Source: Macrostomum lignano (lineage: Eukaryota). From it: a stretch of 64,000 nt of DNA. This document shows, one piece after another, positions 460-37,987 of the stretch. The translations under genes and the position numbers were made by a program. The stretch's first letter is position 1. The number at the start of each line of letters is the position of its first letter. Under the pieces are notes generated by a model. The model saw only the letters and a program-made list of their open reading frames with translations. It was not told the origin of the DNA and made no database searches. The stretch is taken from assembly GCA_002269645.1 (NCBI GenBank), contig NIVC01002326.1, positions 28,563 through 92,562 of the forward strand. The letters run 5' to 3'.

Positions 460-2130
460 CTGTCTGGCCCACTGTCCCGGCCTGGCCAGGTGCCGGTCCC
501 GCATCAGGCCGAACAGTCCGGCGTGATGGGTCAGCGGTGCATCCCAGTTCAGGCAGGCGTCAACTTCCCGGTCGGTGATGCCAGCATCGGCGCCACCGAC
601 GCCGCCGCCAGCTGCCGGCCGACCGAAGCTGTTGTCCTCATCGTCGCTGTCGTCCTCCTCGTCGTCGTCGTCTTGCTCTTCCTCGAGGACCACTTCTTCG
701 ATGTCCTCGGCGCCGCCAGACCGCCTTGACGCGGAGGCGGCGGCGGCGGCAGCGGCCCCGTCGGCTGAGGCGTCGCCCTCCTCGCCGGCCGAGGTCTCCA
801 CGGACTCGATCCGGTAGAAGCCGCGCCTGGTGCGCCGGCCGGACTCAATGGAGCCGTCGGCCGACAGGGCAGCCGGACTGTCCACCCGGCTGCTGCCACA
901 CTCGGCCGCGGACGAGTCGCCAAGCAGCAGGCGTTCCCGGCGCAATCGGGAGCGCTGCAATTGAAGGCGGCTGCTGGCGCGACTGCCGCTGTTCACGTTG
1001 GAGTCGTCCGTCTCCTCCTGGGTTGAAGCAGAAAAACAGCTTTGATCACTGTGACCACTTTGAGCACTAGGGCAATCAGGGGATTCTGCTGAACGATTAA
1101 CTAGATAACTGGTGGTTGGCACCCGTGCCCTCAATTACCCCAGCTAATGCTGGCACCCATTTTACAGCTGGGTGAACTGAAGCAATGCAGAGTTAAGTGT
1201 CTTGCTCAAGGACACAAATTGCTCCGAATGGATCGAGAATTGAACCCCCGACCTTCCAGTCGTGAGTCCGATGCTCTAACCACTAGGCTACAACCCCTAA
1301 TAGGCTACAACCCCCTACTAGGCTAAAACCACATTGAAAACCAGTTGATTCCCTTGACAACCAGTTCATTCCCTTGACAACCAGGTAATCACGTCGACAA
1401 CCAGTTGATTCTCTTGACAACCAGGCAATCACGTTGACAACTAGTTCATTCTCTTGACAACCAGGTAATCACATTGACAACCAGTTGATTCTCTTGACAA
1501 CCAGGCAATCACGTTGACAACCATTTCATTCTCTTGACAACCAGGCAATCACGTTGACAACCAGTTCATTCTCTTGACAACAAGGCAATCACGTTGACAA
1601 CCAGTTGATTGCCTTGACAACCAGTTGATTCTCTTGACAACCAGGTAATCACATTGACAACTAGATGATTCCCTTGAAAACCAGGTGAGTACTTTGATAA
1701 CCAGGTAAATTCCTTCACAACGGGGTGATTTCATTGACAAGCAGATTAGCTTAGCAAGCTAAGCAGTTACAATACATGCCAGTAGGGTACTTGCTGGTCA
1801 GCTATGTTACTCCCTTGTAAAAAAGTGACCCAAAAATTCGGGTGATATCCTAGCAATCTTGATCCACCGGGAAGTTATGAGAACCCTACAAGAAGTGTAT
1901 ACTTGAGTACTTCAAGAGTCACACTTAAGGACAAGCCAGCTGTCAACAGAACACATCAAATAGGCTCAGCAGGCTCGGCTTACCCCGCCAGCAATTTGAA
2001 TGTCGATTTCATCCTCGGCCCCATCGACATCCTCGGCATCATAATCATCTTCGAGCTCCATAGCCGCTTCATCGGGCACAGGAGGCTGCTGACGGCAATC
2101 AACGCCAGCAACCTGCTCCAGCTGCTCCAT
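460..2130 (-). CDS. 5' part of a gene with a long acidic, low-complexity N-terminus; possibly DCAF8/WDR42A-like (continues past the window start)
   Basis: Exons 2130-1984 (ATG; donor GGG|GTAAGC) and 1017-460 (acceptor TGTTTTTCTGCTTCAACCCAG|, donor CAG|GTGGGT) join in phase 0. The E/D-rich tract followed by LMRDRHL..QWARQ recalls the pre-WD40 segment of DCAF8. No WD40 repeats are visible in the window, so the identity is tentative. Confidence 0.5.
1135..1292 (-). mobile_element. tRNA-derived CORE-type SINE (3' truncated) in intron 1 of the DCAF8-like gene
   Basis: Minus-strand A box TAGCCTAGTGG (1290-1280) and B box GGTTCAATTC (1246-1237). The plus strand reads CCCATTTTACAG...GTTAAGTGTCTTGCTCAAGGACACA, closely resembling the MIR/CORE domain. 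Confidence 0.7.
1345..1740. repeat. ~20-bp alternating minisatellite (TTGACAACCAG core)
   Basis: Direct tandem periodicity. Confidence 0.85.
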
Positions 2131-2619
2131 CAGGTTTTCACCGTCGGATGAAGCTGCCTGTGTTGGCAAGTCGTGCCGCGCCGGTTGCTGGGAATTTCCA
2201 GTCGAAGAGGATTCCTGCAAAAGTACATGTTGTTAGTACTTTTATAATGCGCGAAGTATAGCACTTCTCGGGCAAATATTAAATTCACTAATTCTCATTA
2301 GTAACAATATAGCCGACCAACTCTAACGGGATTCATTACATGGAACGGCAAAGCACAAGTTCAGAAAGACAAACATGAAATAATTTTTTTGTCCAAGAGC
2401 CTTAATCAGGGCTGTAGCCAATGTTTATTTCTGTTTGTCAGTAATTTACTACTACTACTACTAAGAATATTCCAGTAGCATATTAGACGCACTGCAACAA
2501 ATTTTTAGAAAATGCACGAATAATTTAAGAAGCAAATGATATGAACTGCAACTGTCAGTCGGGGAAATAATGCAGCGGAAGTCCTGGACGCTCTCTGATT
2601 TGGTTCCTGTAGCTGAATC

Positions 2620-3065
2620 TGGCACTTGGAACTTGAAAAATGGCGGCCCGGTTTTCAAATCTGGCACTTGGAACTTGAAAAATGGCGGCCCGGTTTTCAA
2701 ATCTGGCACTTGGAACTTGAAAAATGGCGGCCCGGGTTTTCAAATCTGGCACTTGGAACTTGAAAAATGGCGGCCCGGGTTTTCAAATCTGGCACTTGGA
2801 ACTTGAAAAATGGCGGCTCGGTTTTCAAATCTGGCACTTGGAACTTGAAAAATGGCGGCTCGGTTTTCAAATCTGGCACTTGGAACTTGAAAAATGGTGG
2901 CCCGGTTTTCAAATCTGGCACTTGGAACTTGAAAAATGGCCACCAGGTTTTCAAATCTGGCACTTGGAACTTGAAAAATGGTAGCCCGGTTTTCAAATCT
3001 GGCACTTGGAACTTGAAAAATGGCGGCTAGGTTTTCAAATCTGGCACCTTGAGTTTTGAAAAATG
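2620..3065. repeat. 42-bp minisatellite containing AAAATGGCGGC
   Basis: Unit AAATCTGGCACTTGGAACTTGAAAAATGGCGGCCCGGTTTTC, ~10-11 copies. Confidence 0.95.
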
Positions 3066-3175
3066 GCGACTAGGTTTCGAAATCATTTAATCACGATTTC
3101 CACATAATTGAAACAATTCACAACCTCAATTAATTAATATGCAAATCAGGAAGGACGCCAAAAACGCCAAAATCG

Positions 3176-6100
3176 TCACTGCTTGGACTTGACATCCATG
3201 ACAACTCGAATGCCCTGGCCGGCCAGTTCTGAGCACAGGTAGCGCCACACGTGACCGACTCGCACCGTGACGATGCCAGGACTTCCAGCGCCGTCTCGCT
3301 GCTGCTGCTCCCGGCTGCTGCTCTCGTCGCAGGCGCTGCACACCCAGCCTTCGTCGTCGGCGCCGGCCTCAGCGGTGGCAGCGGCGAACATCGGGGCCAA
3401 CAGGCTGCCGCAGGCGGAGCAGACGCGAACGAAAGCGCCGTCGGAACAGTCGACAAGCCTGTCCTGGATGACGTAGGCGGCGCCGTGCGAGATTAGCGAG
3501 TCGCGTTCCATCTCGCCTAGTCGAACGCCGCCGCCAATTTTGCGACCTTTGGCCGGCTGGCGGAATGTGTTGTCTATTGGGCCGGTTGATCGCACCTGGA
3601 GTTCCGGTTCGCTTGGATTCTTAGAATTCTTGGAAGCTACAGGTATAAAACGGACAGGTGAAAGGGAGAAGATAGGGCTTCTAATGACAAGTGGGAAAGA
3701 GGCTCTTGAGAGCAGAGAAAAAACGGGTCATTCAACGGCAAAGGGGTCATTTATAAAGGGCAAGCAAAGGGGTCATTTAAGGACACGAGAAGGGGGTCAT
3801 TTAAGGACAAACAAAGGGGGTCATTTAGGGACAAGAATAGGGCGTCATTAAAGGACACGAAAGGGGGGGTTTATTTAAGGACAAGCAAAGGGGTTCATTC
3901 AGGGACACGAAAAAGGGTCATTTAAGGATGAACAAAGGGGTTTATTCAGCGAAACGAAAAGGGGTCATTTAAGGACAAACAAAGTGGGTCGTTTAAGGAC
4001 ATGAAAAGGGGTTCATGAAAGAACAAGCAAAGGGGTCATTCAAGGACAAACAGGGGGATCATTTAAGGACACGAAGAAAGGGGGGCCGGGGTCATCTCGG
4101 TCATTTAAAGAATAGGGGGGTCATTCAAGGACACGAAAAGGGATTCATTTAAGGTCAAGCTTGAAAGGGGTCATTCAAGGACAAAATGAAACAAAGGGAT
4201 CATTTAAGGACACGTAAAGGGTCATTACCAAAAGTTAAATGTTTCTACAGACGGGTGAAAATGAGATCACTCAAGGACAGATGAAGGTCAGTACAGACTG
4301 GGCCATACGCGGCCATATACGCAACAAAAGCCCCAAAAAGCAGCAGGCACCGCAGTGAAAAAAGCAACTCGCCTGGAACTTGTCGGCAACCATGTGGCGC
4401 AGGCGCTGATAATAGACCATGCCGACAAAGATCTGCGCCTCCAGCAGGCGGCCAGTGAAGCCGCAGTACATCGGCTCCGTGCACCATCTGTCGAAGCCGT
4501 GCCGCTGAAGCACGTCGGCGTAGTCTTCAAATAGCGGCGCGTCGATTTCGCCGTCGCGTTGAAAAGCCGTAGCGTCGACGCAGTCGCCAGACAGTGCGGC
4601 GGATTTGCCGGCGAGGAATTCCAGCATCATGCCGACAGTCATGCGGGAGGGGAACCCGTGCGGATTGAAGATGATGTCTGGCACGATGCCAGTCGGAGTG
4701 AACGGCATGTCCTCGGCGGGCAGCAGCAGACTGTTGACACCTTTCTGGCCGTGCCGAGAGCTGAACTTGTCGCCGATGTCGGGCCTGCGAGGCAGACGGA
4801 CGGTGAGGGTGGCCCGGTGCGGCTGACCGGCGGTGCTCACGCACTCCAGGTAGCCCGGGTCGCCTTTGTACCGGACTACCGTGTGGTGCCGGGTCTCGTC
4901 GCTGGGGGGGGGGGGTTGAGATGGCGGCATGGAGATTAAACACAGCAGCGAGATGGCGCTTGAGAGTGACATTTCCCTGCATACATGAGCCGATAGGGAG
5001 TGACATTTCCCTGCATACATGAGCCGATAGGGAGTGACATTTCCCTGCATACATGAGCCGATAGGGAGTGACATTTCCCTGCATACATGAGCCGATAGGG
5101 AGTGACATTTTCCTGCATACATGAGCCGATAGGGAGTGACATTTCCCTGCATACATGAGCCGATAGGGAGTGACATTTCCCTGCATACATGAGCCGATAG
5201 GGAGTGACATTTTCCTGCATACATGAGCCGATAGGGAGTGACATTTCCCTGCATACATGAGCCGATAGGGAGTGACATTTCCCTGCATACATGAGCCGAT
5301 AGGGAGTGACATTTCCCTGCATACATGAGCCGATAGGGAGTGACATTTCCCTGCATACATGAGCCGATAGGGAGTGACATTTCCCTGCATACATGAGCCG
5401 ATAGGGAGTGACATTTTCCTGCATACATGAGCCGATAGGGAGTGACATTTCCCTGCATACATGAGCCGATAGGGAGTGACACTTCCCTGCATACATGAGC
5501 CGATAGGGAGTGACACTTCCCTGCATACATGAGCCGATAGGGAGTGACATTTCCCTGCATACATGAGCCGATAGGGAGTGACACTTCCCTGCATACATGA
5601 GCCGATAGGGAGTGACACTTCCCTGCATACATGAGCCGATAGGGAGTGACATTTCCCTGCATACATGAGCCGATAGGGAGTGACATTTCCCTGCATACAT
5701 GAGCCGATAGGGAGTGACATTTCCCTGCATACATGAGCCGATAGGGAGTGACATTTCCCTGCATACATGAGCCGATAGGGAGTGACACTTCCCTGCATAC
5801 ATGAGCCGATAGGGAGTGACACTTCCCTGCATACATGAGCCGATAGGGAGTGACATTTCCCTGCATACATGAGCCGATAGGGAGTGACATTTCCTGCATA
5901 TATGAGCCAATAGGGAGTGACATTTCCTGCATATGAGCCGATAGGGAGTGACAGTTCACCTGTAGTAGCAGTAGACGGGATCGCCGGGCTGCAGCGGTGT
6001 CCCGATCGGCGGGAAGCCGTCCGCCTCGATGCCCGAGGCCGCCGGCTCCGGGCCGAACACGCCGAATCGCAGCGGACAGGCCGGTGCTGCCGCGCCGCTG

Positions 6101-9100
6101 CTCGACTGCTGCTGTCGACGACCACCGCCACCGCTGCCACCGCCGCCGCCTTCAAGCTTGGTGAGGTCGATGACCTGCGACTTGTAGATGCAGGCGTCAG
6201 CTAAGCCGCGGTCGTAAGCCGCTTTGTTGATCACCATGGCGTCCTCCATGTCGTAGCTGCGAGTGGAGCGTTTGATGCACCGTTTTGGATTAATGTCTAA
6301 TACAGTACAGCTGTGGTGCCACTAATACAGTACAGCTGTGGTGCTGGTGCCACTAATACAGTACAGCTGTGGTGCCACTAATACAGTACAGCTGTGGTGC
6401 CACTAATACAGTACAGCTGTGGTGCCACTAATACAGTACAGCTGTGGTGCCACTAATACAGTACAGCTGTGGTGCCACTAATACAGTACAGCTGTGGTGC
6501 CACTAATACAGTACAGCTGTGGTGCCACTAATACAGTACAGCTGTGGTGCCACTAATACAGTACAGCTGTGGTGCCACTAATACAGTACAGCTGTGGTGC
6601 CACTAATACAGTACAGCTGTGGTGCCACTAATACAGTACAGCTGTGGTGCCACTAATACAGTACAGCTGTGGTGCCACTAATACAGTACAGCTGTGGTGC
6701 CACTAATACAGTACAGCTGTGGTGCCACTAATACAGTACAGCTGTGGTGCCACTAATACAGTACAGCTGTGGTGCCACTAATACAGTACAGCTGTGGTGC
6801 CATTAATACAGTACAGCTGTGGTGCCACTAATACAGTACAGCTGTGGTGCCACTAATACAGTACAGCTGTAGTGCCACTAATACAGTCCAGCTGCGGTGC
6901 CACTAATACAGTCCAGCTGTGGTGCCACTAATACAGCAGCACGGTACAGCAACAACAAAGGTTAAAAACAAAGAAAAGAAGCGAGCCTCACCCAGTGTAA
7001 GAGACCACAGCCACAATGGCATTGAACCCGAGCGCATTGTCGCTCATGCCGTACTTATCAAAGGTATTAGTTTTAACCATAGGCTTCTGCGGACACAGTA
7101 ATCTGTACAGTTTATTGTCAGACCGATGCCTGTAGCTGTTATAGCTGTGACCCATGGACTGCTTGCCCATCTGGCACTGGTAGATATTTCTGGGACTCTG
7201 ATTGAAATCAGGGAACGGGGTTAGGCCGGCAACGAAGCTAAATATAGCATTCTTATCGCACTCGCAATGGGTCGAGTCTGGCTGCAACGATTTTTCATCA
7301 ATTGCGATGCCCAGAAAGCACTGCTCGTAGGGCCCGATGTACTCTAAGCAGTTGCTGACCAGATTGCGGACCGGCCGGAGCAGCCGAGCCGAGTCGCTGA
7401 ATAGGTAGAGGCCCGGATAGGGGCCAGCAGAGCCGGCGCCGCGCGGCGTTACCAAGGCAACCTCCAGGGTTCGGGGCACTAGGCGAGCTCGCCGCGAACC
7501 CGACGGTGGCGACGTCTGCAATGGTGAAGAAAGTCTTAGAGATGCCAGTGGGTTGGAAGCGTGGGAGTACGGAATGAAATAATCACGTGACTAAATTTAA
7601 TTTCAGTGAAGTACTGTCTACAATCACGCGACTGAACTTGGCCTCGATTATCACGTGACTGAACTTGGCCTTGATAACCACGTGACTGGACTTGGCCTTG
7701 ATAATCATGCGACTGAACTTGGCCTTAATAATCAGTAATCACGTGACTGAATTTGGCCTTGATAACTACGTGACTGAACTTGGCCTTGATAATCACGCGA
7801 CTGAACTTGGCCTGAAAAATCACGTGACTGAATTTGGCCTTGATAACCACGTGACTGAACTTGGCCTTGATAATCACGCGACTGAACTTGGCTTTGATAA
7901 TCACGTGACTGAACTTGGCTTTGATAATCACGTGACTGAACTTGGCTTTGATAATCACGCGACTGAACTTGGCCTTGATAACCACGTGACTGAACTTGGC
8001 CTTGATAATCACGTGACTGAACTTGGCCTTGATAATCTCGTGACTGAACTTGGCCTTGATAACCACGTGACTGAACTTGGCCTTGATAATCACGCGACTG
8101 AACTTGGCCTTGACAATCTCGTGACTGAACTGGATTATCCCGTGATTGAAGTTTGGCATAAAGGTAGTTGTGATTAACCATGCAAGGTAAAATTGATGTC
8201 GCAAGAAAATCGCTATCAACAGCCGGTTCACCTTTTGCAGCCGCAGCCAGTTGGCCAGCCCGACAGCCAGCCGGGGCGGCACCAGGCCGCACAGCACGCC
8301 GTCCAGTAGCACAGGCAAGCAGGTCTGCAGGTCCTGACTGAGCGCGGATGCTTCATTTAACGGCACCAGGCCGCGCAGGCACATCTCGGCGGTCAGGCTG
8401 GCCCGATCCGGTCGCTCCGGCGAGCTGACTACCAAGCAGGCGGCGGTGAGATGATTCAACAAGCCGCAAGGTGTACCGTCTGGCGTGTGCACCGGACAGA
8501 TGAAGCCCCAGGTCTCCGGTAGCAGGCGCCTAACCGCGGTAGTTCGCATCTCGGTGAAAAAAGCGCCCCGATGTACGGCGCGAAAATGGGCGGCAAATCT
8601 TAGCCGATTGATATTGTCGCCGGGCACCACCAGACCGGTGTTCTGCAGCAGCAGCAGGCTCTGGCTGTTCAAATTGCCTGTGGCCATGAAATTCTCCATC
8701 GCGGCCGTGATGTCGTGCGAACACAGGCCTACTGCCGTTTTTATTGCGTCGCTTATGGCTGCCTGGTTGCCGGCTTGGGCCTTGGCCAGCTTCTTCTCCA
8801 TCAGGCGCTGCAAGGTCAGCAGCCATCTGTAGAGAATGTCGCGGAGCACCTGCGACGGAGCGGAGGTAGGGAGGCAATGCAAGAGCTTAAGCTCTGACTC
8901 TGCGATGAGATATTATGCTCGTGAAGTGAATCTATATGAAATCTCATTCTCGGTTTGCAACTAGGAGCGTATATAAGATAAAATCTAACCGTGAGATTTC
9001 TATTCTAAAAATCTCACTATGAGATTTTGACCCTAGCATGCGATCTCACCAAAAGATAACGACCCTAGAATGAGATCTCACCATGAGATTACGACCCTAG

Positions 9101-9619
9101 AATGAGATCTCACCATGAGATTACGACCCTAAAATGAGATCTCACCATGAGATTACGACCCTAGAATGAGATCTAATCATGGAATTACGACCCTCGAATG
9201 AGATCTAACCATAATACTCCGATCCTAGTATGAGATTTGATCATGAGATTACGACTCTAGAATGAGATATAGATTGCATCACTAGGTGTAAGCATTGTCC
9301 CTCTCCAGCCGCACACCTGCAGATAGAGATGACCGGGCAGCAGCAGCTCCTGGAACATCAGGCTATCGTTGGATTCAACGGCGCACAGGCCACGTACGCT
9401 GGCGTGCAGTTTGCGCAGCATCAGGCAGAGCAGGTAGAACTTGTCAGCATCCGATTCGCAGTGGGTGAGCACGGAGCGCTGCATCAGATGGCGGCCAAGG
9501 TCCAAGTCGCTGGCGTCGGCCGGTACGCGCAGCTTTTGCCTGGCAACCGGGCGACGGGGAATAAATGTACAGAGAGCTACAGGTGCGGCGTCAGTTGCTG
9601 ATTGACTAACTAACTAGCC

Positions 9620-9668
<49 letters not shown>

Positions 9669-9743
9669 GCTAACTAACAAACTAACAAACTAACAAACTA
9701 ACAAACTAACGAACGAACGAACGAACTAACTAACTAACTAGCC

Positions 9744-9796
<53 letters not shown>

Positions 9797-9799
9797 GCC

Positions 9800-9842
<43 letters not shown>

Positions 9843-9991: not shown

Positions 9992-10024
<33 letters not shown>

Positions 10025-10172: not shown

Positions 10173-10175
10173 GCC

Positions 10176-27179: not shown

Positions 27180-30100
27180 CTACAGTTCGAGCCCAAGCCT
27201 AGTAACCAGCTGAGTAACTCGGGCCACAGACTGCGGATTCTCGTGCGCCCGAAGGCCTTCAAGCGCCGTTGACCAGTCGGGCTGCAGAACGTGCGGTCCA
27301 ACAGTTGGCTGACGCAGAAGAGCCAGCAGTTCTCCTAGTCGGGTGAGCAGGCATTGAATCTCTGCGTAGCCGCAGTCAGGCGACGGTGGGCAGGACTCGG
27401 CGTAGGTCCGAATCTTAGTCAGCACTAGCAGGCACCGGTGCATATTGTCCTAGCGGGAATAAAGCCATGGAAGCTTGATTAGCCCCGCACCTGAATGGCT
27501 CCTTGATTAGCCCGGAATCATGACCCACTGCTGAGCCCGGAATCATGACCCACTGCTGACGCCCGGAATCATGACCCACTGCTGACGCCCGGAATCATGA
27601 CCCACTGCTGACGCCCGGAATCATGACCCACTGCTGACGCCCGGAATCATGACCCACTGCTGACGCCCGGAATCATGACCCACTGCTGAGCCCGGAATCA
27701 TGACCCACTGCAGACGCCCGGAATCATGACCCACTGCTGAGCCCGGAATCATGACCCACTGCTGAGCCCGGAATCATGATCCACTGCTGAGCCCGGAATC
27801 ATGACCCTAGCTTTCGGTCTGCCTGCAGCTCTATATGCCCAACCTCAACAGCACCAGTAGCACCAGGGCTCACCTGTACAGAGCAGGCCACCTTGGCCAG
27901 GCTGGTGGCCAGACAGCACCAAAGTCGGGGCGGCAGAGCCGACCAGCCGAGTTTCGCAGCCAGAATCTCGTAGGCCAACAGTTCCAGGCACTCGTACAGT
28001 CGGGCGATGCGCTGAGCCTCGCTTTCGCCGGCCACCTCGCCAGAATCCGCGCCGTCCAACTCGTCATTGTCGGCGCGTCGTCTGCTGCAGGCTTCGCCGA
28101 AGCCCCACAATAAAGTGAGGTACATCGGCAGGGCCCGGCCAATTGCTCGCTTCCACTGGGCCGCGGCGAAGTCCAGGCACTCGTCCAGCTGGTCCAGCAG
28201 CGCCCTCGGCCGCCGATCAATCAGTCGGCGAGCCAGCAGGGCCAACCGTCTGGCCACGGCGTCGGCGTGTCGATGTCCGCCGAACACCAGCAGGCTGCGC
28301 TCGGCCAGAGCGGGCAGCATCCGGCTCAAACAGTCGCCGCAATCGCCGCCGCCGCCGACATCGTCATTGGCAGCGGAGCTGTAGACTTCGTCTGCTGTCA
28401 GTAGCAAAATCAAATTGGCGAATTCGTCCAATAGGCGGAGACTGGCAGAGCAGGCGGCGGCAACAAGCGGCCCACCTGTAGTTTGCTGCTGTTGCCGCTG
28501 CTGCTGCTGCCGCTGCTGGCCTGACAGATAGTCGAATAGCACTTCAAGCTTAGCGGCAGTGTCGCCTGCGCCGGAGGTGTCACGAGTCAGGAACAGAGCG
28601 TAAGGCTGAATCTGTTGTAAGGTTAGAGAGTAGTGTAGCGTGTTTCAGTTACAGAGGCGGGGGGGGGCTGTGTGCGAGTGAGAGGCATCTCGCGAGAGGC
28701 GAGAGACACAACCGGCGAGAGGCATTACTGCCCATTCTACCCTGAGCAGGCACACAAGCGCACAGATACAGGCCCGCGAACAGCGGCCCTAACCTTATTT
28801 TTTATCGTTAGGCATGTACGCTTCATTGTGTCTTGGGGTGGCCTACAAGGACTTTGATTGCACGAACAGATTCAAGCCGAGATTCCAATTTAGCCCCAAA
28901 TTAATTTGACTGCACTTGGAATCGAGCCCAGGCCGCTGCGCCAGACCACTGCATTAAATAAGGTTTTATCACAGACAATTTTATCACAGACTCGTAAAGT
29001 CGACAAACAGATGAAGCCACCTAAGACCCAACACATGCCAGCTTCATGTGATCGTCATATAAAAGCTGAATTCAAGGCACAGAGTGTACACGCCTGACGA
29101 TTAGAAAGTCAGGACTAGACCACTGTACACCCTGTGTGAGCGTGTGTTTGAGTGCGTGCCCTCACTCACATTAGGCAACACTCACATTAGGCAACACTCA
29201 CATTAGGCAACACTCACATTAGGCAACACTCACATTAGGCAACACTCACATTAGGCAACACTCACATTAGGCAACACTCACATTAGGCAACACTCACATT
29301 AGGCAGCAGCTCTCCGCTTGAGGTGTTTTTCAATTCAATTTTTGCTTTTGACTCAAAAAAATTTTTTTACTTGTCACTCGTTATAAAATACATAGCTTGG
29401 AGGTCGCTTTTTCGCTGTGCGCCTCCCGCGCGTTGCTCGCCTTTCACATTAGGCATCACTCACATTAGGCAACACTCACATTAGGCAACAATCACATTAG
29501 GCAACACTCACATTAGGCAACACTCATATTAGGCAACACTCACATTAGCAGGGAGTTGCGCAATAAAATCCGGACCCAGCGATTCCAACCGATTCAACTC
29601 GTACAGAGCAGACAGACAGGGCAAATCGATGAGGCAGTGCAGCATCTCCAGGCTGCAGGCGGGCGACAGGCAAGCTGGCAGGATCTTATCGGCAAACATG
29701 TCAGCAAAGGTAGACGGCCACCTGGCTAGCAGTTTGATGAAGCTGGGAAAATGGCGGACAGTGATTCCATGCTCCCAGCATAATGGTTCGGCATTATCGG
29801 CAGTAAACCGTAGCAATTCTAAGCAGAACTCTTGCGAATTAATCAGCCGATCGATGCAGACTGTGTACAGCGGCGCGAGGAATTGCGGAGCGTCTTTGCC
29901 AACGCTGGCGTGGTGAGTTAATAAAAATCTTGCCAGTGTCACGTGCAGCGTTGCCGACTGTGGAATGGGTAAATTCACATTAGCAAATTACCACTGTTAT
30001 TTTTTACATAAAATACTAACACTGAATTTTAAGTCGGCCTGGTCTGCTTGTGCCATAATCGCAGAGAAGATAGATTTGGCCGCTGAAAATTTTGCTGCTC

Positions 30101-32572
30101 CCTACTGGCCAGTCACTTTAGCCGCTCCCTACTGTCCGGTCACTTTAGCCGCTCCCTACTGGCCGGTCACTTTAGCCGCTCCCTACTGTCCGGTCACTTT
30201 AGCCGCTCCCTACTGTCCGGTCACTTTAGCCGCTCCCTACTGTCCGGTCACTTTAGCCGCTCCCTACTGTCCGGTCACTTTAGCCGCTCCCTACTGGCCG
30301 TTCCCTACTGGCCGCTCCCTACTATTCGGTCACTTTAGCCGCTTCCTAACTGTCCGACAACTTTGGCTTATTATTCAATGCAACAAACCTGCGCAGGCGG
30401 AGGTGCCGGTCCAAGCAGCTGGGCGTAGAGACCCTCCATCCGGGTGAAATACCTGGCCAGCAGGCCGGAGTCCAGGCGGCACAACAGGCAGGCCAATTCG
30501 GCAGTCTCATTGAGCAGGGCGGGCATAACGGAATCGGCGTCGGCTTGAGCAGCCGGTTTTCTCTCGCACTGATCCAGCAGCTGCCAGCACAGGCTGTGCA
30601 AGTCCGATTTCACGGCCAGCCCGGTGCGGGCGACGCTGGCCGGGCTGCCGCATTCCAGCAGGCAGAGCAGCCAGCGTCGGAGAACGGAGAAAGCGGCGTG
30701 GCTCAACTCCAAGTCGGGGCTCCAGTGCGGGAACTGTGGGGAAAAAGGCCACGTCAGAGCGCCAAGACTACTGTTAGTAACATTTCTTGCGTGTCCGATA
30801 GAAAGCACCAACAATTGGAATTTGTTGAATAAGGCAAACCAAATAAATTGATAATATCCCTTCCCCACACTCCCCAATTACCTGATGTGCGCAGGTGAGA
30901 AACTGCTGACCAACCTGCTGACCAACTGGCTGCCCGTCAATCTCCGTCACTGCAGCCGCTGAGGCAGCGCTGACGCCGCCGACAGCCGATGCAGGCGAGC
31001 CGCCGCCGCCGCCGCCGAACTCGCCGGAGAGCCAGGCGCGGCCAGGCCAGCGAAGGATGTCAACCAAGGCGCACAGGCAGGCGTGCAGGCGATCGTCAGA
31101 TAGCAACAACGATGACGCTTGCTGCTGCTGCTTTTGCTGGCGACAAGCGTCGGCTAGGCGAGTGAGAAAGGCCAAGCACTGTAGCCGCCTCGCCGGGCTG
31201 GCCCGCTCGCCGCCACCCTGCGGACTTGACAGCTCACGAGTCGCCTGCCCAATTAGCGATTCGGCTGAGGCTGCGAAATTGAATAGGCGTTTCATTGTGT
31301 AGGTGCAGTTAGGCGCAAATAGATTCCCTAAAACGTACACGAGGCAAAGCTAGGGGGCGCGAGCTAGAGCCCAGCAGCAGAGTGGGCACAGCTACAGAAG
31401 GGGCGCCAGCTACAGTACAGATGGGGGCACGGCTACAGTACAGAGGGGGCGCCAGCTACAGTACAGAGGGGGCGCCAGCTACAGTACAGAGGGGGCGCAA
31501 GCTATAGAGGGCGCCAGCTACAGTACAGAGAGGGCACAGCTACAGTACACAGGGGCACAGCTACAGGGGGAGCGCCGCGCGGCGGCTACGGAGGGGGCGC
31601 CAGCTACAGTACAGAGGGGGCGCCAGCTATAGAGAGGGCGCCAGCTACAGTACAGAGAGGGCACAGCTACAGTACACAGGGGGCACAGCTACAGGGGGAG
31701 CGTCGCGCGGCGGCTACGGAGGGGGCGCCAGCTACAGAGGGGGCGCCAGCTACAGAGGGGGCGCCAGCTATAGAGGGGGCACTAGCTACAGAGGGGGCGC
31801 CAGCTATAGAGGGGGCGCCAGCTACAGAGGGGGCGCCAGCTACAGAGGGGGCGCCAGCTACAGAGGGGCGCCAGCTACAGAGGGGGCACTAGCTACAGAG
31901 GGGGCGCCAGCTATAGAGGGGGCGCCAGCTACAGAGGGGGCGCCAGCTACAGAGGGGCGCCAGCTACAGAGGGGGCACTAGCTACAGAGGGGGCGCCAGC
32001 TATAGAGGGGGCGCCAGCTACAGAGGGGGCGCCAGCTACAGAGGGGGCGCCAGCTACAGAGGCCCCTGCGACTGTTGCTGGAGGATGGCTGCCGTGACTA
32101 AATTAATGAAAATCTCACCAGCGGTCAGGCAGTCGGAGGAGCGCAGCAGGCCCAGGAGTTCGCCAGCCGCGGCGTCCAAAGCGGCTGACATCGCCTGCCG
32201 ATGAGCCTCAAAAAAAGCTGACCGCCGGCCATCGAAATAATAATCAATTAAAGTGTCAAGCAAAGCTCCAGCGGCCTCTTTGGCAAAGATGAAGCGTTGC
32301 TGCTGCTGTTTCGGCTGCCCAGCAACAGTTGCTACCCGGGCAATGAGACGCACAGTCATGCGGAGCTGGTTAGGCGCCAGGTCGCACAGGCCGGCCACGG
32401 CGTACCGAGCGCGCAGCCGGTGCAGCAGGCTGTTCAAATCTGGCAGATCAACGCCAGTGCCGTCGGCAGCGAATTCGAATGCCTCATCGTGCCGGCTGAG
32501 CAGCAATTCGAGTTCGCGAAGGCTGACCGATTCGGCCTGACGAATCTGGGCCTCGTAGGCTGTGCGGTTCAT
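27180..32572 (-). CDS. AP5Z1: AP-5 adaptor complex subunit zeta-1 (SPG48), 6 exons, ~869 aa
   Basis: join(32572-32119, 31270-30882, 30733-30389, 29957-29544, 28611-27874, 27449-27180), phases consistent. Colinear motifs: VTEIDG, AAFSVLRRWLL, LEMLHCLIDLPCLSAL, LWGFGE, LYECLELLAYE, TSLAKVA, TRLGELLALLRQPTVGPHVLQP. Confidence 0.88.
27510..27806. repeat. 25-26-bp minisatellite, AP5Z1 intron 5
   Basis: Unit GCCCGGAATCATGACCCACTGCTGA(C). Confidence 0.93.
29163..29548. repeat. 16-bp minisatellite in two blocks, AP5Z1 intron 4
   Basis: Unit CACTCACATTAGGCAA at ~29163-29305 and ~29445-29548. Confidence 0.92.
30095..30350. repeat. 27-bp minisatellite, AP5Z1 intron 3
   Basis: Unit GGTCACTTTAGCCGCTCCCTACTGTCC. 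Confidence 0.92.
31390..32062. repeat. ~18-bp GC-rich minisatellite, AP5Z1 intron 1
   Basis: Unit GGGGGCGCCAGCTACAGA. Confidence 0.92.
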
Positions 32573-32669
32573 GCTGCTGGCTTAGCCTATGTTGGCTCAG
32601 TGGCGCTGCTGGAATATTAGAAACAGCGGGCTGGTGCGATTGAGCCTGCATGTTTGTAATCCAGTCAGT

Positions 32670-33435
32670 ACTCTGTCCATCCTGTCCTGTTTACTGCCCA
32701 TCCTGTCCTGTTTACTGCCTATCCTGCCCTATTTACAGTCTATCCTGTCCTGTTTACAGTCTATCCTGCCCTGTTTACTGCCTATCCTGCCCTATTTACA
32801 GTCTATCCTGCCCTGTTTACAGTCTATCCTGCCCTGTTTACTGCCTATCCTGCCCTATTTACAGTCTATCCTGCCCTGTTTACAGTCTATCCTGCCCTGT
32901 TTACAGTCTATCCTGCCCTATTTACAGTCTATCCTGCCCTGTTTACAGTCTATCCTGCCCTGTTTACTGCCTATCCTGCCCTATTTACAGTCTATCCTGC
33001 CCTGTTTACAGTCTATCCTGCCCTGTTTACTGCCTATCCTGCCCTATTTACAGTCCATCCTGTCCTGTTTACAGTCTATCCTGTCCTGTTTACAGTCTAT
33101 CCTGGCCTGTTTACAGTCCATCCTGTCCTGTTTACAGTCTATCCTGTCCTGTTTACAGTCTATCCTGCCCTGTTTACAGTCCATCCTGTCCTGTTTACAG
33201 TCTATCCTGTCCTGTTTACAGTCTATCCTGTCCTGTTTACAGTCTATCCTGCCCTGTTTACTGCCTATCCTGTCCTGTTTACAGTCTATCCTGCCCTGTT
33301 TACAGTCCATCCTGTCCTGTTTACAGTCTATCCTGTCCTGTTTACAGTCTATCCTGTCCTGTTTACAGTCTATCCTGTCCTGTTTACAGTCTATCCTGTC
33401 CTGTTTACAGTCCATCCTGTCCTGTTTACTGTCTA
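32670..33435. repeat. 21-bp minisatellite in the hnRNP-AP5Z1 spacer
   Basis: Unit CTATCCTGCCCTGTTTACAGT. Confidence 0.95.
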
Positions 33436-34194
33436 CTCAGAGTCTGTCCTGAACAAATGGCAAAACAACTACAATGAGACATCAGTGGAGCAGAACGCTG
33501 AGGTGCAATTTGCGGAACGCAGTCGTTTTTGTATTTCTGCTTTTTGTCAGACGAGTGTTTCAACAACAAAAAGCTGAACAATAGAAAAAAAAGCGCAAGA
33601 AACGGTTGCGAAGCGAGCTGAAGGAGTGAAATTTAGACAGCTAGCTACTAGAGTGAGAACAAAGGTGCCGGCGTACCTTAATGAAATTACTAAATTTCCT
33701 GTATAGCAGAAATGATGCAGAGTTCGCTAATTTAGGTATTAATTTAACTTACCCACAAGATTAATTTAGACAAAGGACTGAAGCTGATATAAAAACACTG
33801 AATAATACATGAACAAAAAATAAGCAGGCTAAATATGGATAAGCTGGAAAATTGCCAGAACAGACAGACAAGACCTGTACACACAACGGTAGTGGGGATA
33901 AATTGTGCAACATTAGAATAGATAAATAAATATTGGTTATTAATAGCTTACCCTTAGCTTGTCTACCCTGAACACACAACTGTAATTACCGGGCAAAGTC
34001 GGCTACTATAATTTGGGACAATTGAATTATGAATATTGTTAAACTAAAAGCATTACAAACAGTTACAACAACAATTAGGGAATTGTATGATTATGTAACA
34101 AAAGAAAAGTTATATTAGAATTGCAAGTTTTACAAAAAGAAATTGTTTTGCTTTTTTAAGTCTACGTCACCGTGGCTGCGTGAGCACGAGTCAC

Positions 34195-37100
34195 TCAGTA
34201 GCGGAGGAAAATCTCAATGTAGCGGGTGCCTGGAATGTTTTTTTGTTTAAAGTGCACAATGTACGCGAGTAGATCTGAGCCTATTAAATCCATGTATTAA
34301 TCTGTACAGAAAGTCTGAAGTCAACACTGCTGAACCAGACGTAAAAATTCAACACAAAACTGTCACGTGTCACGTGACTGCTCAAAATTTATCTCATCAC
34401 TGCTCAAACCCTAATACCCGTCACTGCTCAAACCCTAACACCCACCAATGCTCAAACCCTAAAACCCGTCACTGCTCAAACCCTAACACCCATGTCAGTG
34501 CTCAAACCCTAACACCCGCCAATGCTCAAACCCTAATACCCGTCACTGCTCAAACCCTAACACCCGCCAATGCTCAAACCCTAATACCCGTCACTGCTCA
34601 AACCCTAACACCCACCAATGCTCAAACCCTAATACCCGTCACTGCTCAAACCCTAACACCCATGTCACTGCTCAAACCCTAACACCCATGTCACTGCTCA
34701 AACCCTAACACCCGCCAATGCTCAAACCCTAATACCCGTCACTGCTCAAACCCTAACACCCACCAATGCTCAAACCCTAATACCCGTCACTGCTCAAACC
34801 CTAGCACCCGCCAATGCTCAAATCCTAATGCCCGTCACTGCTCAAACCCTAACACCCACCAATGCTCAAACCCTAACACCCACCAATGCTCAAACCCTAA
34901 TACCCGTCACTGCTCAAATCTTAGCCCATCACTGCTCAAACCCTAACGCAATCCCAGCTAGCTCACCAAGGCAATCGCCGTTGCGAGCCAGAGCTTTCTG
35001 CTGCTCGTCGGCAGTATTAAAGAACACATCCGCTTCGCCGGAGCTCCGGCCGCTTGCGTCTGGCAGCACATTGACTCTGGCCGGCTGCAGCGGATAGAAA
35101 AAGTTGACAATCTCCCGCTCGCCGGCTGACCAGGGCAGGCCGCGCAGGTGCAGCTGAAATTTCAGTGGGATTCCAGCTACTTTAATAAGCATCACTAGCT
35201 ACTCCAATGAGCATCACTAGCTACTCCAATGAGCATCACTAGCTACTCCAATGAGCATCACTAGCTACTCCAATGAGCATCACTAGCTACTCCAATGAGC
35301 ATCACTAGCTACTCCAATGAGCATCACTAGCTACTCCAATGAGCATCACTAGCTACTCCAATGAGCATCACTAGCTACTCCAATGAGCATCACTAGCTAC
35401 TCCAATGAGCATCACTAGCTACTCCAATGAGCATCACTAGCTACTCCAATGAGCATCACTAGCTACTCCAATGAGCATCACTAGCTACTCCAATGAGCAT
35501 CACTAGCTACTCCAATGAGCATCACTAGCTACTCCAATGAGCATCACTAGCTACTCCAATGAGCTTCATTAGCTACTCCAATGAGTACTATGTAAGATGC
35601 AATAAGCATCCAAAGAATGCCACTATCTGCAGGAGAGAGCGCCACTTGCAGTAGCCGCCAAAGCAGTTATTATTGGCACAAAAATGCTCAAATTATAATC
35701 GATTGCTCACCTTAAAAGCCCCGCCACCTCGTCCCATGCCGCCGCCGCCACCCATGCCGCCGCGGAAGGCGCCACGCGGAGCTACGCCCATGGGGCCGCC
35801 GAAGCCAGCGCCAGCTGCGGCGCCACCAAATCCGCCGCCGCCGCCAGGCATGAGGCCGGGCACGCCGCCGCCGCCGTTGCCAAATCCGACTGGGCCGGCG
35901 CCGCTATCCGGAGCCTGGTGCAGAAACAAATCAATATAACGCGGGCCCATGTGCTGCTTATCCTTAGCCATGGCCGAGGCGGCGTCCTCGCCGTTGTAAA
36001 AGTCCACGTCAGCTTCGCCGCTGGGCAAACCGGCCGCGTTATAGTGCAATTCCACGTGAGCAATGCTCAGAGGGGCGAAAAATTCGGCAATCTCCTGCTC
36101 AGTAGCGGAATAGGGCAGGCCGCGCATATGCACCCAGTAGCCAGTGCGCGATGCCCAATCACTACCCGGCTTGCCCGATGACCCGAACCGCCTGCCCGCT
36201 GGCGGCCCAGCCTGATACGGACTGGGCCTGCCCAGACCCGGCCGCATTGGCATGGGCCCACCGGCCCGAGGCCCGCCCCGCATTGGGCCGCCCGCCACCC
36301 GGCCACCCATTGCCATTGGTCCGCCAGGATAACCAGGGGGGCCCGCATAACCAACACCTGGCTGTTGATAATCTCCGTAGGCACCGATGCCCGCATAGTC
36401 TGCAAGTAGTTATTATATTGTTTACAATAACAGTTCGAGTGGGGATGGGACGGGCGAGTGAGCTGCTTTATTAATTATATTATACTGCCATATAAAACTG
36501 CTGCAGAGTGCCCAGTCGAGGAGCATTGTGCATTCAACCAGGAGGGCAATCCAATCCAACCAACAACCACCGTGGCCAATCCAATCCAATCCAACAAACC
36601 ATGTGGCCAATCCAATCCAACCACCAACCACCGTGGCCAATCCAATCCAACCAAGTGTCTAATCCAATCCATTTATTCAATCCAATCCAACCAACCATGT
36701 GGCCAATCCAACCATGTGGCCAATCCAACCAACCATGTGGCCAATCCAACCAACCATGTGGCCAATCCAACCAACCATGTGGCCAATCCAACCAACCATG
36801 TGGCCAATCCAACCAACCATGTGGCCAATCCAACCAACCATGTGGCCAATCCAACCAACCATGTGGCCAATCCAACCAACCATGTGGCCAATCCAACCAA
36901 CCATGTGGCCAATCCAACCAACCATGTGGCCAATCCAACCAACCATGTGGCCAATCCAACCAACCATGTGGCATATCCAATTCAACCATGTGGCCAATCC
37001 AACCAACCATGTGGCATATCCAATCCAACCAAGTGTCCAAACCAATCAATTTTTCCAATCCAATTAAACCAACTAACCAATAAACAAGTCAACCAGCACA

Positions 37101-37987
37101 ACCAGGCTCCAACCCAACCTCTCCGCATGACCATGAAAATCCAGCCAGATTATCAATTGAAACGAACGCGCGGAACCACTTACCTGACGGACCATATCCA
37201 ACCAACCAATCGATTAGCCATTTCCAGCAATACTTTGATCGCATCTCAAACTATGCGAGTAGATGCCGTGTATAATTTAATTGATAGATACACAACGTGA
37301 TTCACTCACCATAACAACAGCGATATGCAAAAAAACATGATAAGAAACAAAAAAACGATAAAGAAATAACTCACCGCCCGAGTACATCTGCTGCAAACTC
37401 TGCTGCCTATTAGCCTCAGCATAGGCCTCGCCCATAGAGCTGGGGAACAGCTCAATATAACGGTGGCCCATATTCTCCTTGTTTTTAGACATTGCTCGCA
37501 TAGCAACGTCAGGAGCGGTGAACTGCACGTAGGCCTCGCCAGACGGCTTGCCGCTATCGTTATAGACCATCAGGATGCCGTCCTTCACAATAGTGTAGCC
37601 GTGGAAGAACTCTCTAATAGAGGCGAAATCGGCCGAGAATGGCAGGCCGCGCATGCGCAGCACGGGCTCGCGCAGCGAGGAATCCGAGCCGGACCTGGGC
37701 AGCACAAATTTCATCTCGTTCTCATTAGACGGGAACAGTTCAACGTAGCGCTTGCCAATGTGCTTCCGGTCGAATTGCATAGCCGATTTAGCGTCGTCAA
37801 CTGTGTCAAATTCCACGTACGCCTCGCCGGACGGCCGGCCGAGTCCGTCGCGGGTCAGATGGACGCCTTTTTGGCCATCTTTCACAGCGCAGCCTTCGAA
37901 GAATTCAACAATAGTCTCCGGGGTTACATCGAAGGGTAGGCCGCGCATACGAATCACGCTGCTCTGGACGTCACCGTTGGATGGCAT
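34195..37987 (-). CDS. HNRNPF/H: hnRNP F/H-family RNA-binding protein with four quasi-RRMs and Gly/Tyr/Pro-rich linkers, 4 exons, ~507 aa
   Basis: join(37987-37375, 36399-35711, 35153-34967, 34229-34195), phases 1,0,1. There are four (M/L)RGLP[FYW]...GEA[YD]V.F...RY[IV][ED][LI]F units. The last one is completed by a 35-nt exon not in the ORF track (GTRYIEIFLRY*). Confidence 0.9.
34400..34947. repeat. 24-bp minisatellite containing AAACCCTAA, hnRNP intron 3
   Basis: Units CTCAAACCCTAATACCCGTCACTG / CTCAAACCCTAACACCCACCAATG. Confidence 0.93.
35189..35585. repeat. 22-bp minisatellite, hnRNP intron 2
   Basis: Unit GCATCACTAGCTACTCCAATGA. Confidence 0.96.
36545..37045. repeat. 21-bp minisatellite, hnRNP intron 1
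   Basis: Unit CCAATCCAACCAACCATGTGG. Confidence 0.95.

What the first reader, a model, noticed from the sequence alone, without database searches (positions are those of the whole stretch)
460..37987. Candidate seven-gene eukaryotic operon (hnRNP F/H - AP5Z1 - TM6SF - CerS - MYND - POLR1B - DCAF8-like) resolved by SL trans-splicing
Seen: seven consecutive genes on the minus strand (1/64 if orientations were independent). Stop-to-next-acceptor gaps are about 1.6, 1.1, 1.25, 4.3, 1.45 and 1.0 kb, and each gap contains at least one minisatellite array. Each of the six downstream genes has a 3' splice acceptor 6-85 nt before its ATG with no identifiable upstream donor exon, five of them with a branch point: CTAATATTCCAG| (32609), TACTAATATTTGCAG| (26081), TTGCAG| (22554), CTAACTGCTAGTCTATTTTTAG| (17082), TACTAATTCCTAG| (14325), TACTAAC..TTTGCAG| (2215). 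The first gene abuts a ~20-kb gene-free region that could hold the single promoter. Known: flatworms use SL trans-splicing and have operons. Inference: one ~38-kb polycistron whose spacers were inflated by tandem repeats.
Basis: partly seen in the sequence, partly recalled or inferred. Interest (0 to 1): 0.82.

Follow-up and report, generated by a model that had tools for sequence, protein, structure and literature searches.

The report
Flatworm trans-spliced operon-type gene cluster
Seven unrelated housekeeping genes lie head to tail in the flatworm Macrostomum lignano and look like one or a few operons whose messages are separated by spliced-leader trans-splicing, a layout with repeat-swollen spacers that is already published for this species.

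Summary
The window is the last 64 kb of Macrostomum lignano contig NIVC01002326.1 (assembly Mlig_3_7). Seven minus-strand genes are present: hnRNP F/H-like, AP5Z1, TM6SF, ceramide synthase, MYND, POLR1B and DCAF8-like.

Two corrections apply. The MYND trans-splice site is most likely at 17021/17020, not 17082. The DCAF8-like gene runs about 3.4 kb past the window's left edge.

Indirect RNA evidence supports spliced-leader (SL) trans-splicing for four downstream genes. Deposited 5'-partial CDSs start 0-3 nt after the predicted acceptors of TM6SF, CerS and DCAF8-like. RNA-seq polishing also left SL 3'-end "footprints" at the TM6SF site (sister contigs) and the MYND site.

The deposited locus tags (Mlig033648 g2, g3; Mlig032808 g1-g3 on a sister contig) place MYND, POLR1B and DCAF8-like in one published transcriptional unit. 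TM6SF and CerS carry other prefixes.

All six spacers shrink to 0.5-0.8 kb once tandem repeats are removed. That meets the published M. lignano operon criterion.

A single 38-kb transcript from one promoter remains unproven. The kind, including repeat-inflated spacers, was described in 2021, so novelty is low.

The parts
34195..37987 (-). Gene 1, hnRNP F/H-like, four RRMs. My model: exons 37987-37375, 36399-35711, 35153-34967, 34229-34195 (507 aa). It is absent from the deposited gene calls seen here.
   Evidence: Pfam RRM_1; homologues hnRNP F/H/GRSF1; junctions read. The model was not checked against a deposited protein.
38074..38080 (-). Candidate SL acceptor TTTTCAG upstream of the hnRNP ATG (first exon base 38073), with CTAAT 30 nt upstream.
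   Evidence: sequence motif only
32609..34194 (-). Spacer 1 (1586 nt) with a 21-mer array at 32675-33435. The non-repeat remainder is 825 nt. There is no canonical AATAAA/ATTAAA.
27180..32572 (-). Gene 2, AP5Z1. ATG 32572, stop 27182-27180. Predicted acceptor TTCCAG| with first exon base 32608. Not in the deposit for this contig; an 868-aa protein is deposited for the 669-kb sister contig.
   Evidence: Pfam SPG48/TPR_AP5Z1_C. SL use is untested because an in-frame stop lies upstream of the ATG.
26081..27179 (-). Spacer 2 (1099 nt) with arrays at 26897-27091 and 26138-26477. Non-repeat remainder 564 nt. The last AATAAA is at 26510.
23803..26080 (-). Gene 3, TM6SF (PAA58831.1, Mlig005957g4). SL acceptor TTTGCAG| with first exon base 26080. 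The deposited 5'-partial CDS starts at 26078; ATG at 26057; one intron at 25440-24335.
   Evidence: In the sister contigs the acceptor is overwritten by the SL 3' end.
22554..23802 (-). Spacer 3 (1249 nt) with arrays at 23445-23717 and 22600-22812. Non-repeat remainder 763 nt. ATTAAA at 22890.
21420..22553 (-). Gene 4, ceramide synthase, single exon. Acceptor GTTGCAG| with first exon base 22553. The deposited 5'-partial CDS ('AM...') starts at 22550; ATG at 22547.
17021..21419 (-). Spacer 4 (4399 nt to the SL-footprint site) with arrays at 19653-21364 and 17097-19038. Non-repeat remainder 745 nt. AATAAA at 19198 and 19186.
15777..17020 (-). Gene 5, MYND zinc-finger protein (PAA58829.1). The deposited 5'-partial CDS starts at 17019, directly after ...ACTGCATG (final G at 17021), which reads as an SL 3'-end footprint. 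ATG at 16998; intron at 16522-16057.
14325..15776 (-). Spacer 5 (1452 nt) with an 18-mer array at 15019-15669. Non-repeat remainder 801 nt. AATAAA at 14913 and 14750.
3176..14324 (-). Gene 6, POLR1B/RPA2 (PAA58828.1, Mlig033648g2 by pairing with g3). Predicted acceptor TACTAATTCCTAG| with first exon base 14324. CDS exons: 14256-14131, 12954-12532, 10625-10336, 9539-9317, 8849-8232, 7515-6992, 6256-5960, 4901-4373 (GC donor), 3595-3176.
   Evidence: The exact 1149-aa protein was recovered. The acceptor itself is untested because an in-frame stop lies upstream of the ATG.
2215..3175 (-). Spacer 6 (961 nt) with a 42-mer array at 2616-3082. Non-repeat remainder 494 nt. AATAAA at 2429.
1..2214 (-). 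Gene 7, DCAF8-like WD40 protein (PAA58827.1, Mlig033648g3, 705 aa). The deposited 5'-partial CDS starts at 2214, the first base after TACTAAC...TTTGCAG|. Exons in the window: 2214-1984 and 1017-460. The gene continues about 3.4 kb beyond the window's left end.
37988..57898 (.). Region of about 19.9 kb with no recognisable gene: AT-rich (GC about 0.32), only 14% tandem repeats, a reverse-transcriptase remnant at about 55.8-56.05 kb. It is bounded on the right by a plus-strand DEG/ENaC channel gene (57899-about 61200).

Best explanation
This is an operon-type cluster of SL-trans-spliced housekeeping genes in Macrostomum lignano.

MECHANISM. RNA polymerase II reads through several genes. Each upstream message is cleaved and polyadenylated within the AT-rich unique part of the spacer. 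The next message is capped by trans-splicing of the single 35-nt SL (ending ...TTGCATG) onto an acceptor 6-85 nt before its ORF.

SHOWN (indirectly, from deposited annotation and polishing footprints). TM6SF, CerS, MYND and DCAF8-like have 5' ends at such acceptors. MYND, POLR1B and DCAF8-like belong to one published transcriptional unit.

INFERRED. The other junctions work the same way, so the seven genes form one operon or two to three adjacent ones. The minisatellite arrays are neutral filler, as in the introns, and have stretched spacers whose repeat-free length is about 0.5-0.8 kb from stop to acceptor. That corresponds to roughly 90-425 nt from the last poly(A) hexamer to the acceptor.
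For: ORGANISM AND CONTIG. Identified.

PUBLISHED FRAMEWORK. 30% of genes are SL-spliced and 15% are in operons. Repeats inflate operon spacers. The operon rule is same strand, downstream gene SL-spliced, and repeat-adjusted distance under 1 kb. Operons reach nine genes. TBONE cuts transcriptional units at SL-read peaks.

5' ENDS. Deposited 5'-partial CDSs begin 2, 3 and 0 nt after the predicted first exon base of TM6SF, CerS and DCAF8-like. For DCAF8-like this holds in two contigs.

SL FOOTPRINTS. The assembly was Pilon-polished with RNA-seq.
- At the TM6SF site the window reads TTTGCAG|. Sister contigs read TTGCATG| and TTTCATG|, which are substitutions to the SL's last 5 and 4 nt.
- At MYND all copies read ...CTGCATG| exactly where the deposited transcript begins. 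This is one of only two TGCATG occurrences on this strand in 37.5 kb.

LOCUS TAGS. Mlig032808 g1/g2/g3 are MYND/POLR1B/WD40 on the 669-kb contig. Mlig033648 g2/g3 are POLR1B/WD40 on the window contig.

SPACERS. Repeat-adjusted lengths are 825, 564, 763, 684-745, 801 and 494 nt. In three paralogous copies the totals vary up to two-fold, but the non-repeat parts agree within 8 nt.

MOTIFS. Acceptor-motif and branch-motif enrichment over background.

No opposite-strand gene interrupts the run.
Against: - No RNA reads were examined directly; every RNA inference is second-hand.
- TM6SF and CerS carry TU prefixes different from the last three genes, so no published seven-gene TU exists. The authors do say that TUs break in repeat-rich spacers.
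- AP5Z1 and POLR1B acceptors are untested.
- The CerS deposited start is 3 nt, not 0, from the acceptor. This is unexplained.
- SL splicing alone does not prove an operon, because about 60% of SL-spliced genes in this species are monocistronic.
- Raw spacers of 1-4.4 kb are far longer than classical intercistronic regions.
- Non-repeat spacer DNA is no more conserved than intron DNA among the copies (97.7-98.6% against 97.3-98.8%). That neither reveals nor excludes promoters.
- Poly(A) sites are predicted from hexamers only.
Confidence: 0.7

Rival explanations
1. One reading: one heptacistronic pre-mRNA of about 38 kb, made from a single promoter in the AT-rich region upstream of hnRNP. All six downstream genes depend on that promoter.
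For: All six repeat-adjusted spacers are similar (0.5-0.8 kb) and below the published threshold. Spacers resemble introns in repeat load (61% against 66%), unlike the upstream region (14%). Published TUs reach 51.6 kb and are said to fragment in repeat-rich spacers. The next gene upstream is divergent, about 20 kb away.
Against: The published annotation splits the cluster into at least three TU prefixes. hnRNP has its own candidate SL acceptor, so the first gene need not mark the transcript start. No read-through evidence exists for junctions 1-4.
Confidence: 0.33
2. Two or three adjacent transcription units, for example hnRNP-AP5Z1-TM6SF, CerS, and MYND-POLR1B-DCAF8L. Internal promoters sit in some spacers, and first genes are SL-spliced from their own outrons.
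For: Three TU prefixes appear in the deposit. The longest raw gap, 4.3 kb, lies just before the MYND-POLR1B-DCAF8L unit. In the published analysis 82% of operons start with an SL-spliced gene, since 18% start with a non-spliced one.
Against: The repeat-adjusted gap before MYND (about 0.7 kb) is no larger than the others. TU fragmentation at repeats is an acknowledged artefact.
Confidence: 0.37
3. Seven independently promoted genes share an orientation by chance. Each is SL-spliced as a monocistronic transcript, and the shared TU prefix reflects read-through noise or assembly merging.
For: About 60% of SL-spliced genes are not in operons. A 1/64 orientation coincidence is unremarkable in a genome-wide scan. 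The functions are unrelated.
Against: The g1-g2-g3 numbering of three unrelated genes under one prefix is seen on two contigs. Repeat-free spacers are uniformly short and include the 3' UTRs. The next same-strand gene, a K2P channel in the 669-kb copy, has a repeat-adjusted gap of 2.8 kb, showing what a non-operon gap looks like here.
Confidence: 0.1

Closest known systems
Macrostomum lignano operons as defined by Ustyantsev & Berezikov 2021 (PMC8629364), using the Mlig_3_7 annotation of Wudarski et al. 2017 (PMC5730564)
   Same: Same organism and assembly. Same-strand neighbours with a single 35-nt SL. The [T/C]TNCAG acceptor is present at 4 of 6 downstream genes. Spacers are inflated by tandem repeats, and repeat-adjusted distances are under 1 kb. 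The members are conserved housekeeping genes. The size is within the reported range of 2-9 genes.
   Different: This locus is not individually described; a search for its locus tags found no paper. At seven genes it sits in the extreme tail, since 93% of reported operons have two or three genes. Only three of its genes share a published TU prefix.
Caenorhabditis elegans SL2-type operons (Blumenthal & Gleason 2003; Allen et al. 2011, as cited in PMC8629364)
   Same: A polycistronic pre-mRNA is resolved by 3'-end formation plus SL trans-splicing. The genes are functionally unrelated housekeeping genes. Operons hold 2-8 genes.
   Different: Intercistronic regions are about 100 nt in C. elegans, against 1-4.4 kb raw here. 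C. elegans has a dedicated SL2 for downstream genes, whereas M. lignano has one SL. The genes here also have large, repeat-filled introns.
Parasitic-flatworm operons (Schistosoma, Echinococcus; PMC12582326)
   Same: Same phylum, SL-resolved. That paper notes that chimeric gene models reveal polycistrons with intergenic distances of up to several kb.
   Different: Operons there are usually two genes called with a threshold of 300 nt or less. No orthologous gene pair from this cluster was checked against their conserved-operon lists.

Membership tests
M. lignano operon (operational definition of PMC8629364) | Immediately adjacent genes on the same strand, not interrupted by an opposite-strand gene | tested here: met
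   Seven minus-strand genes. Plus-strand ORFs in the region are translations of arrays. The deposited calls show no opposite-strand gene.
M. lignano operon (operational definition of PMC8629364) | Downstream gene of each pair is SL trans-spliced (SL-containing reads at its 5' end) | tested here: inconclusive
   Indirect support exists for TM6SF, CerS and DCAF8-like: deposited 5'-partial CDSs start 0-3 nt after the acceptor. TM6SF and MYND also show SL 3'-end polishing footprints. AP5Z1 and POLR1B have motif evidence only. Reads themselves were not available.
M. lignano operon (operational definition of PMC8629364) | Repeat-adjusted intergenic distance below 1 kb | tested here: met
   Stop-to-acceptor distance minus TRF arrays is 825, 564, 763, 684-745, 801 and 494 nt. 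These figures still include the 3' UTRs, so the true intergenic values are smaller. Only tandem repeats were subtracted; no RepeatMasker library was available.
SL-resolved operon in the strict sense (one promoter, one polycistronic pre-mRNA) | A single primary transcript spans the genes | tested here: inconclusive
   MYND, POLR1B and DCAF8-like share a TU prefix with consecutive gene numbers on two contigs, given the naming scheme. TM6SF and CerS have other prefixes. The hnRNP and AP5Z1 tags were not obtainable.
SL-resolved operon in the strict sense (one promoter, one polycistronic pre-mRNA) | No internal promoters or capped TSSs in the spacers | not testable with these tools
   This needs CAGE/TSS-seq, chromatin marks or promoter deletions.
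C. elegans-type SL2 operon | Intercistronic distance of about 100 nt between poly(A) site and trans-splice site | tested here: not met
   Raw gaps are 0.96-4.4 kb. From the last AATAAA/ATTAAA to the acceptor, excluding arrays, the distance is about 90, 125, 225, 425 and 215 nt for five spacers, and the sixth has no hexamer. My arithmetic is; use of these hexamers is unverified.
C. elegans-type SL2 operon | Specialised SL for downstream genes | not tested
   The literature reports a single SL in M. lignano. No SL RNA gene or SL-like sequence is in the window.

The most novel reading that the evidence does not exclude
All seven genes are made as one pre-mRNA of about 38 kb or more, in which kilobase-scale minisatellite arrays sit between cistrons as freely as within introns. 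That would make it one of the longest metazoan operons. It would also show that coupling of polyadenylation to SL trans-splicing tolerates multi-kb intercistronic spacers that vary in length. A strong (TA)CTAAY branch site would mark trans-acceptors specifically: it is seen at 5 of 7 candidate trans sites against 1 of 11 cis sites.
Probability: 0.3. Interest if true: 0.45.

Novelty: new member of a known kind. Interest (0 to 1): 0.25.

Why it matters
If all seven genes are co-transcribed, this locus would be a convenient test case in a transgenic flatworm model. It could show how far a polyadenylation site and the next trans-splice acceptor can be separated, since the three paralogous copies offer natural spacer-length variants of up to two-fold. 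It could also show whether neoblast-type housekeeping genes are co-regulated through operons.

In practice, the more useful by-product is a warning about the reference. Polishing Mlig_3_7 with RNA-seq appears to have overwritten genuine AG acceptors with the last 4-6 nt of the spliced leader. This corrupts splice-site motifs in the reference. It also accidentally marks real trans-splice sites.

Tried and rejected
- Looked for RNA-derived contigs (Logan) encoding the window's CerS. Only NCBI genome copies exist in the collection, so no transcript with an SL could be read.
- The search for homologous proteins with hnRNP and POLR1B exons did not return the contig's own proteins. The deposited proteins were recovered instead by solving exact spliced models and looking them up by identity.
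- The look-up of encoding contigs refuses spliced window proteins. Ids from the listing of cluster members worked.
- AP5Z1 could not be recovered. It is not deposited for this contig. The 669-kb copy differs by substitutions and a 3-nt indel, and its 5' half lies outside the fetched loci. The TU prefixes of AP5Z1 and hnRNP therefore remain unknown.
- At first I read the 'gN' suffix as a copy number within a 95% cluster. I rejected this once MYND, POLR1B and WD40 turned out to share one prefix as g1, g2, g3.
- A full-text search for the four locus-tag prefixes found nothing.
- Rfam found no RNA family in the window. No SL-like sequence with up to 6 mismatches is present.
- 'An array in each gap' was rejected as evidence, because arrays are equally dense in introns.
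- Conservation of non-repeat spacer DNA among the copies was uninformative.
- Bacterial-type promoter and terminator scans were not run, as they do not apply to a metazoan.
Full report
WHAT THE WINDOW IS

The single-exon ORF at 21420-22583 is a ceramide synthase, 99% identical to a Macrostomum lignano protein. Its 376-aa form, starting just after the predicted acceptor, is an exact deposited protein of contig NIVC01002326.1 in assembly GCA_002269645.1 (Mlig_3_7). From the locus coordinates, the window is the last 64 kb of that 92.6-kb contig; window x equals record 28562+x.

Two paralogous or allelic copies of the cluster exist in the same assembly: NIVC01002327.1 (L001) and the 669-kb contig NIVC01000127.1 (L003, L005, L007). 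Both keep the same gene order. They are about 97-99% identical outside the arrays.

CHECKING THE OBSERVATION

All seven genes are real and on the minus strand.
- hnRNP F/H-like: RRM_1 hits and hnRNP F/H/GRSF1 homologues. My four-exon model gives 507 aa with four RRMs and a stop at 34195.
- AP5Z1: SPG48 and TPR_AP5Z1_C.
- TM6SF: PF26083.
- CerS.
- MYND: zf-MYND.
- POLR1B: I solved a nine-exon model that is letter-for-letter the deposited 1149-aa protein.
- DCAF8-like WD40 protein: the best solved-structure match is DCAF8 at E=1.9e-73, against about 1e-20 for WDR5. This gene is cut by the window; its deposited CDS runs from window 2214 to about -3449.

The gaps measure 1586, 1099, 1249, 4338, 1452 and 961 nt, and each holds at least one array. 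The quoted acceptor and branch strings are all present.

The 37988-57898 stretch has no recognisable gene apart from a reverse-transcriptase remnant. It ends at a plus-strand DEG/ENaC channel gene.

IS IT MORE THAN CHANCE?

- The published SL-acceptor motif of this species, [T/C]TNCAG, lies 6-90 nt upstream of 15% of random positions on this strand. It is present at 4 of 6 downstream genes (AP5Z1, TM6SF, CerS, DCAF8-like) and also before hnRNP. My binomial P is about 0.006 for the six.
- A CTAAY branch-like motif lies 8-45 nt upstream of 6.5-9% of AG sites. It occurs at 5 of the 6 quoted acceptors but at only 1 of 11 cis acceptors in the models I verified.
- 'An array in every gap' carries no weight. 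Tandem repeats cover 61% of spacer DNA and 66% of intron DNA in the cluster, against 14% of the upstream 20 kb.

INDIRECT RNA EVIDENCE FOR SL TRANS-SPLICING

The Mlig_3_7 gene models were cut at peaks of SL-containing reads by the TBONE pipeline. Four deposited CDSs in the cluster are 5'-partial, meaning the ORF is open to the 5' end of the transcript model.
- TM6SF starts at 26078, with first exon base 26080.
- CerS starts at 22550, with first exon base 22553.
- DCAF8-like starts at 2214, exactly the first exon base, and does so in both contigs that carry it.
- MYND starts at 17019. No AG precedes it; the sequence reads ...ATTACTGCATG|CCCAGC.

The explanation came from comparing copies at the TM6SF acceptor. 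The window has TTTGCAG|CAAG. L001 has TTGCATG|CAAG and L003 has TTTCATG|CAAG. These are runs of substitutions that turn the last 5 or 4 nt into the 3' end of the SL (...TTATTGCATG).

The assembly was polished with Pilon using RNA-seq mapped by STAR. Reads that start a few bases inside the SL would map with mismatches and overwrite the genome. I therefore read ...TGCATG| before MYND as the same footprint. It is one of only two TGCATG occurrences on this strand in the 37.5-kb region, and it ends exactly where the deposited transcript starts.

AP5Z1 and POLR1B have in-frame stops upstream of their ATGs, so their deposited CDSs say nothing about the 5' end.

One detail is unexplained: the CerS start is 3 nt, not 0-2 nt, from the acceptor.

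EVIDENCE FOR CO-TRANSCRIPTION

Exact look-ups gave the depositors' locus tags.
- 669-kb contig: MYND is Mlig032808g1, POLR1B is g2, DCAF8-like is g3, with consecutive accessions PAA90083, PAA90082 and PAA90081.
- Window contig: DCAF8-like is Mlig033648g3. POLR1B is Mlig033648g2, by pairing of the two names given for the shared sequence.

In that annotation the prefix names a cluster of transcriptional units, and genes are cut out of the units. Three unrelated genes numbered in transcription order under one prefix therefore mean that an RNA-seq-assembled unit spans them.

TM6SF is Mlig005957g4. CerS on the sister contigs is Mlig023378g3 or Mlig025192g1. So the published annotation does not contain one seven-gene unit. 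The same group states that units tend to break in repeat-rich operon spacers.

SPACERS

Across the three copies, total spacer lengths differ up to two-fold:
- AP5Z1-TM6SF: 1099, 2014 and 1087 nt.
- TM6SF-CerS: 1249, 1113 and 2181 nt.
- CerS-MYND: 4338, 4714 and 3083 nt.

The non-repeat remainder is constant across the same copies: 564/565/557, 763/767/765, 684/680/685 and 801/798/798 nt. All length change is therefore array expansion or contraction.

All six repeat-adjusted stop-to-acceptor distances are 494-825 nt. These still include the 3' UTRs, and they are below the published 1-kb operon threshold. From the last AATAAA/ATTAAA to the acceptor, the non-repeat distance is roughly 90, 125, 225, 425 and 215 nt for five spacers; the first spacer has no hexamer. 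My arithmetic is, and use of these hexamers is inferred.

As a local contrast, consider the next same-strand gene after DCAF8-like in the 669-kb copy, a K2P channel. It lies 4.36 kb downstream and keeps 2.8 kb after repeat removal.

INTERPRETATION

The best reading is an operon-type, SL-resolved cluster. At least the last three genes are one unit, four downstream genes are SL-spliced, and the whole cluster fits the species' published operon definition. Whether it is one 38-kb heptacistron (about one chance in three) or two to three adjacent units cannot be decided without reads.

hnRNP has its own good candidate acceptor (TTTTCAG with CTAAT upstream). The transcript start is therefore somewhere upstream of 38073 and is not defined here.

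COMPARISON WITH WHAT IS KNOWN, AND NOVELTY

Ustyantsev & Berezikov 2021 (PMC8629364) already reported the following for this genome: 15% of genes are in operons, repeats inflate operon spacers, the repeat-adjusted mode is about 100 bp, and operons reach nine genes. Wudarski et al. 2017 reported polycistronic units of up to 51.6 kb.

The finding is thus a large new instance of a known kind, and part of it is already encoded in the deposited locus tags. It differs from C. elegans operons in raw spacer length and in using a single SL. Interest is low to moderate.

Noticed in passing
window 26081-26087 versus L001 about 6597-6603 and L003 about 4160-4166; window 17021-17026 (also L005 and L006, upstream of MYND): Assembly artefact. 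The last 4-6 nt before real trans-splice sites are replaced by the 3' end of the spliced leader (GCATG, CATG, TGCATG). This destroys the AG acceptor in the reference. The assembly was Pilon-polished with RNA-seq. The footprints corrupt splice motifs but also mark true SL sites.
   Followed up: partly
window 2214 (DCAF8-like) and 22553 (CerS): The SL ends in ATG. At DCAF8-like that ATG would be in frame with an ORF that is open from the first exon base, whereas the first genomic in-frame ATG is 28 codons downstream. The SL may therefore donate the start codon. At CerS the SL ATG is also in frame, 3 codons upstream. At TM6SF and MYND it is out of frame.
   Followed up: no
window 32608, 26080, 14324, 2214, 38073 versus cis acceptors 12954, 10625, 9539, 8849, 7515, 6256, 4901, 3595, 24334, 16056, 1017: A yeast-like (TA)CTAAY branch motif lies 8-45 nt upstream of 5 of 7 candidate trans-splice acceptors but of only 1 of 11 verified cis acceptors. 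Background is 6.5-9% of AG sites.
   Followed up: partly
window 460-37987 versus 38000-57800: Tandem arrays fill 61% of spacers and 66% of introns inside the cluster but only 14% of the adjacent 20-kb untranscribed-looking region. In four spacers an array ends 46-76 nt upstream of the acceptor or SL site. In five spacers an array starts 55-107 nt after the stop codon.
   Followed up: partly
window 4372-4367: POLR1B intron 8 has a GC donor (CAG|GCGAGT). It is confirmed because only this junction reproduces the deposited 1149-aa protein.
   Followed up: yes
window 34195-35153: The hnRNP F/H-like gene appears to carry a fourth RRM. It is encoded by two small extra exons that sit between two minisatellite arrays (34397-34947 and 35175-35585). 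hnRNP F/H proteins usually have three qRRMs. The model is not validated by a deposited protein.
   Followed up: partly
window 53900-56300: Reverse-transcriptase (RVT_1) remnant of a retroelement on the plus strand, adjacent to or interrupted by a 39-mer array (55066-55730, 17 copies, 99% identical).
   Followed up: partly
window 57899-61200 (+): DEG/ENaC (amiloride-sensitive sodium channel, Pfam ASC) gene, divergent from the cluster. It is the first gene upstream of hnRNP.
   Followed up: partly
L007 19215-22429: In the 669-kb copy a two-pore K+ channel gene (Ion_trans_2) follows DCAF8-like on the same strand after 4.36 kb (2.8 kb without arrays). Its deposited CDS starts mid-exon, so the model is truncated. 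The same-strand run is therefore at least eight genes long.
   Followed up: partly
window 22550-22553: The deposited 5'-partial CerS CDS begins 3 nt after the acceptor instead of 0-2 nt. Neither the CAG| nor the downstream ACAG| acceptor accounts for this.
   Followed up: no
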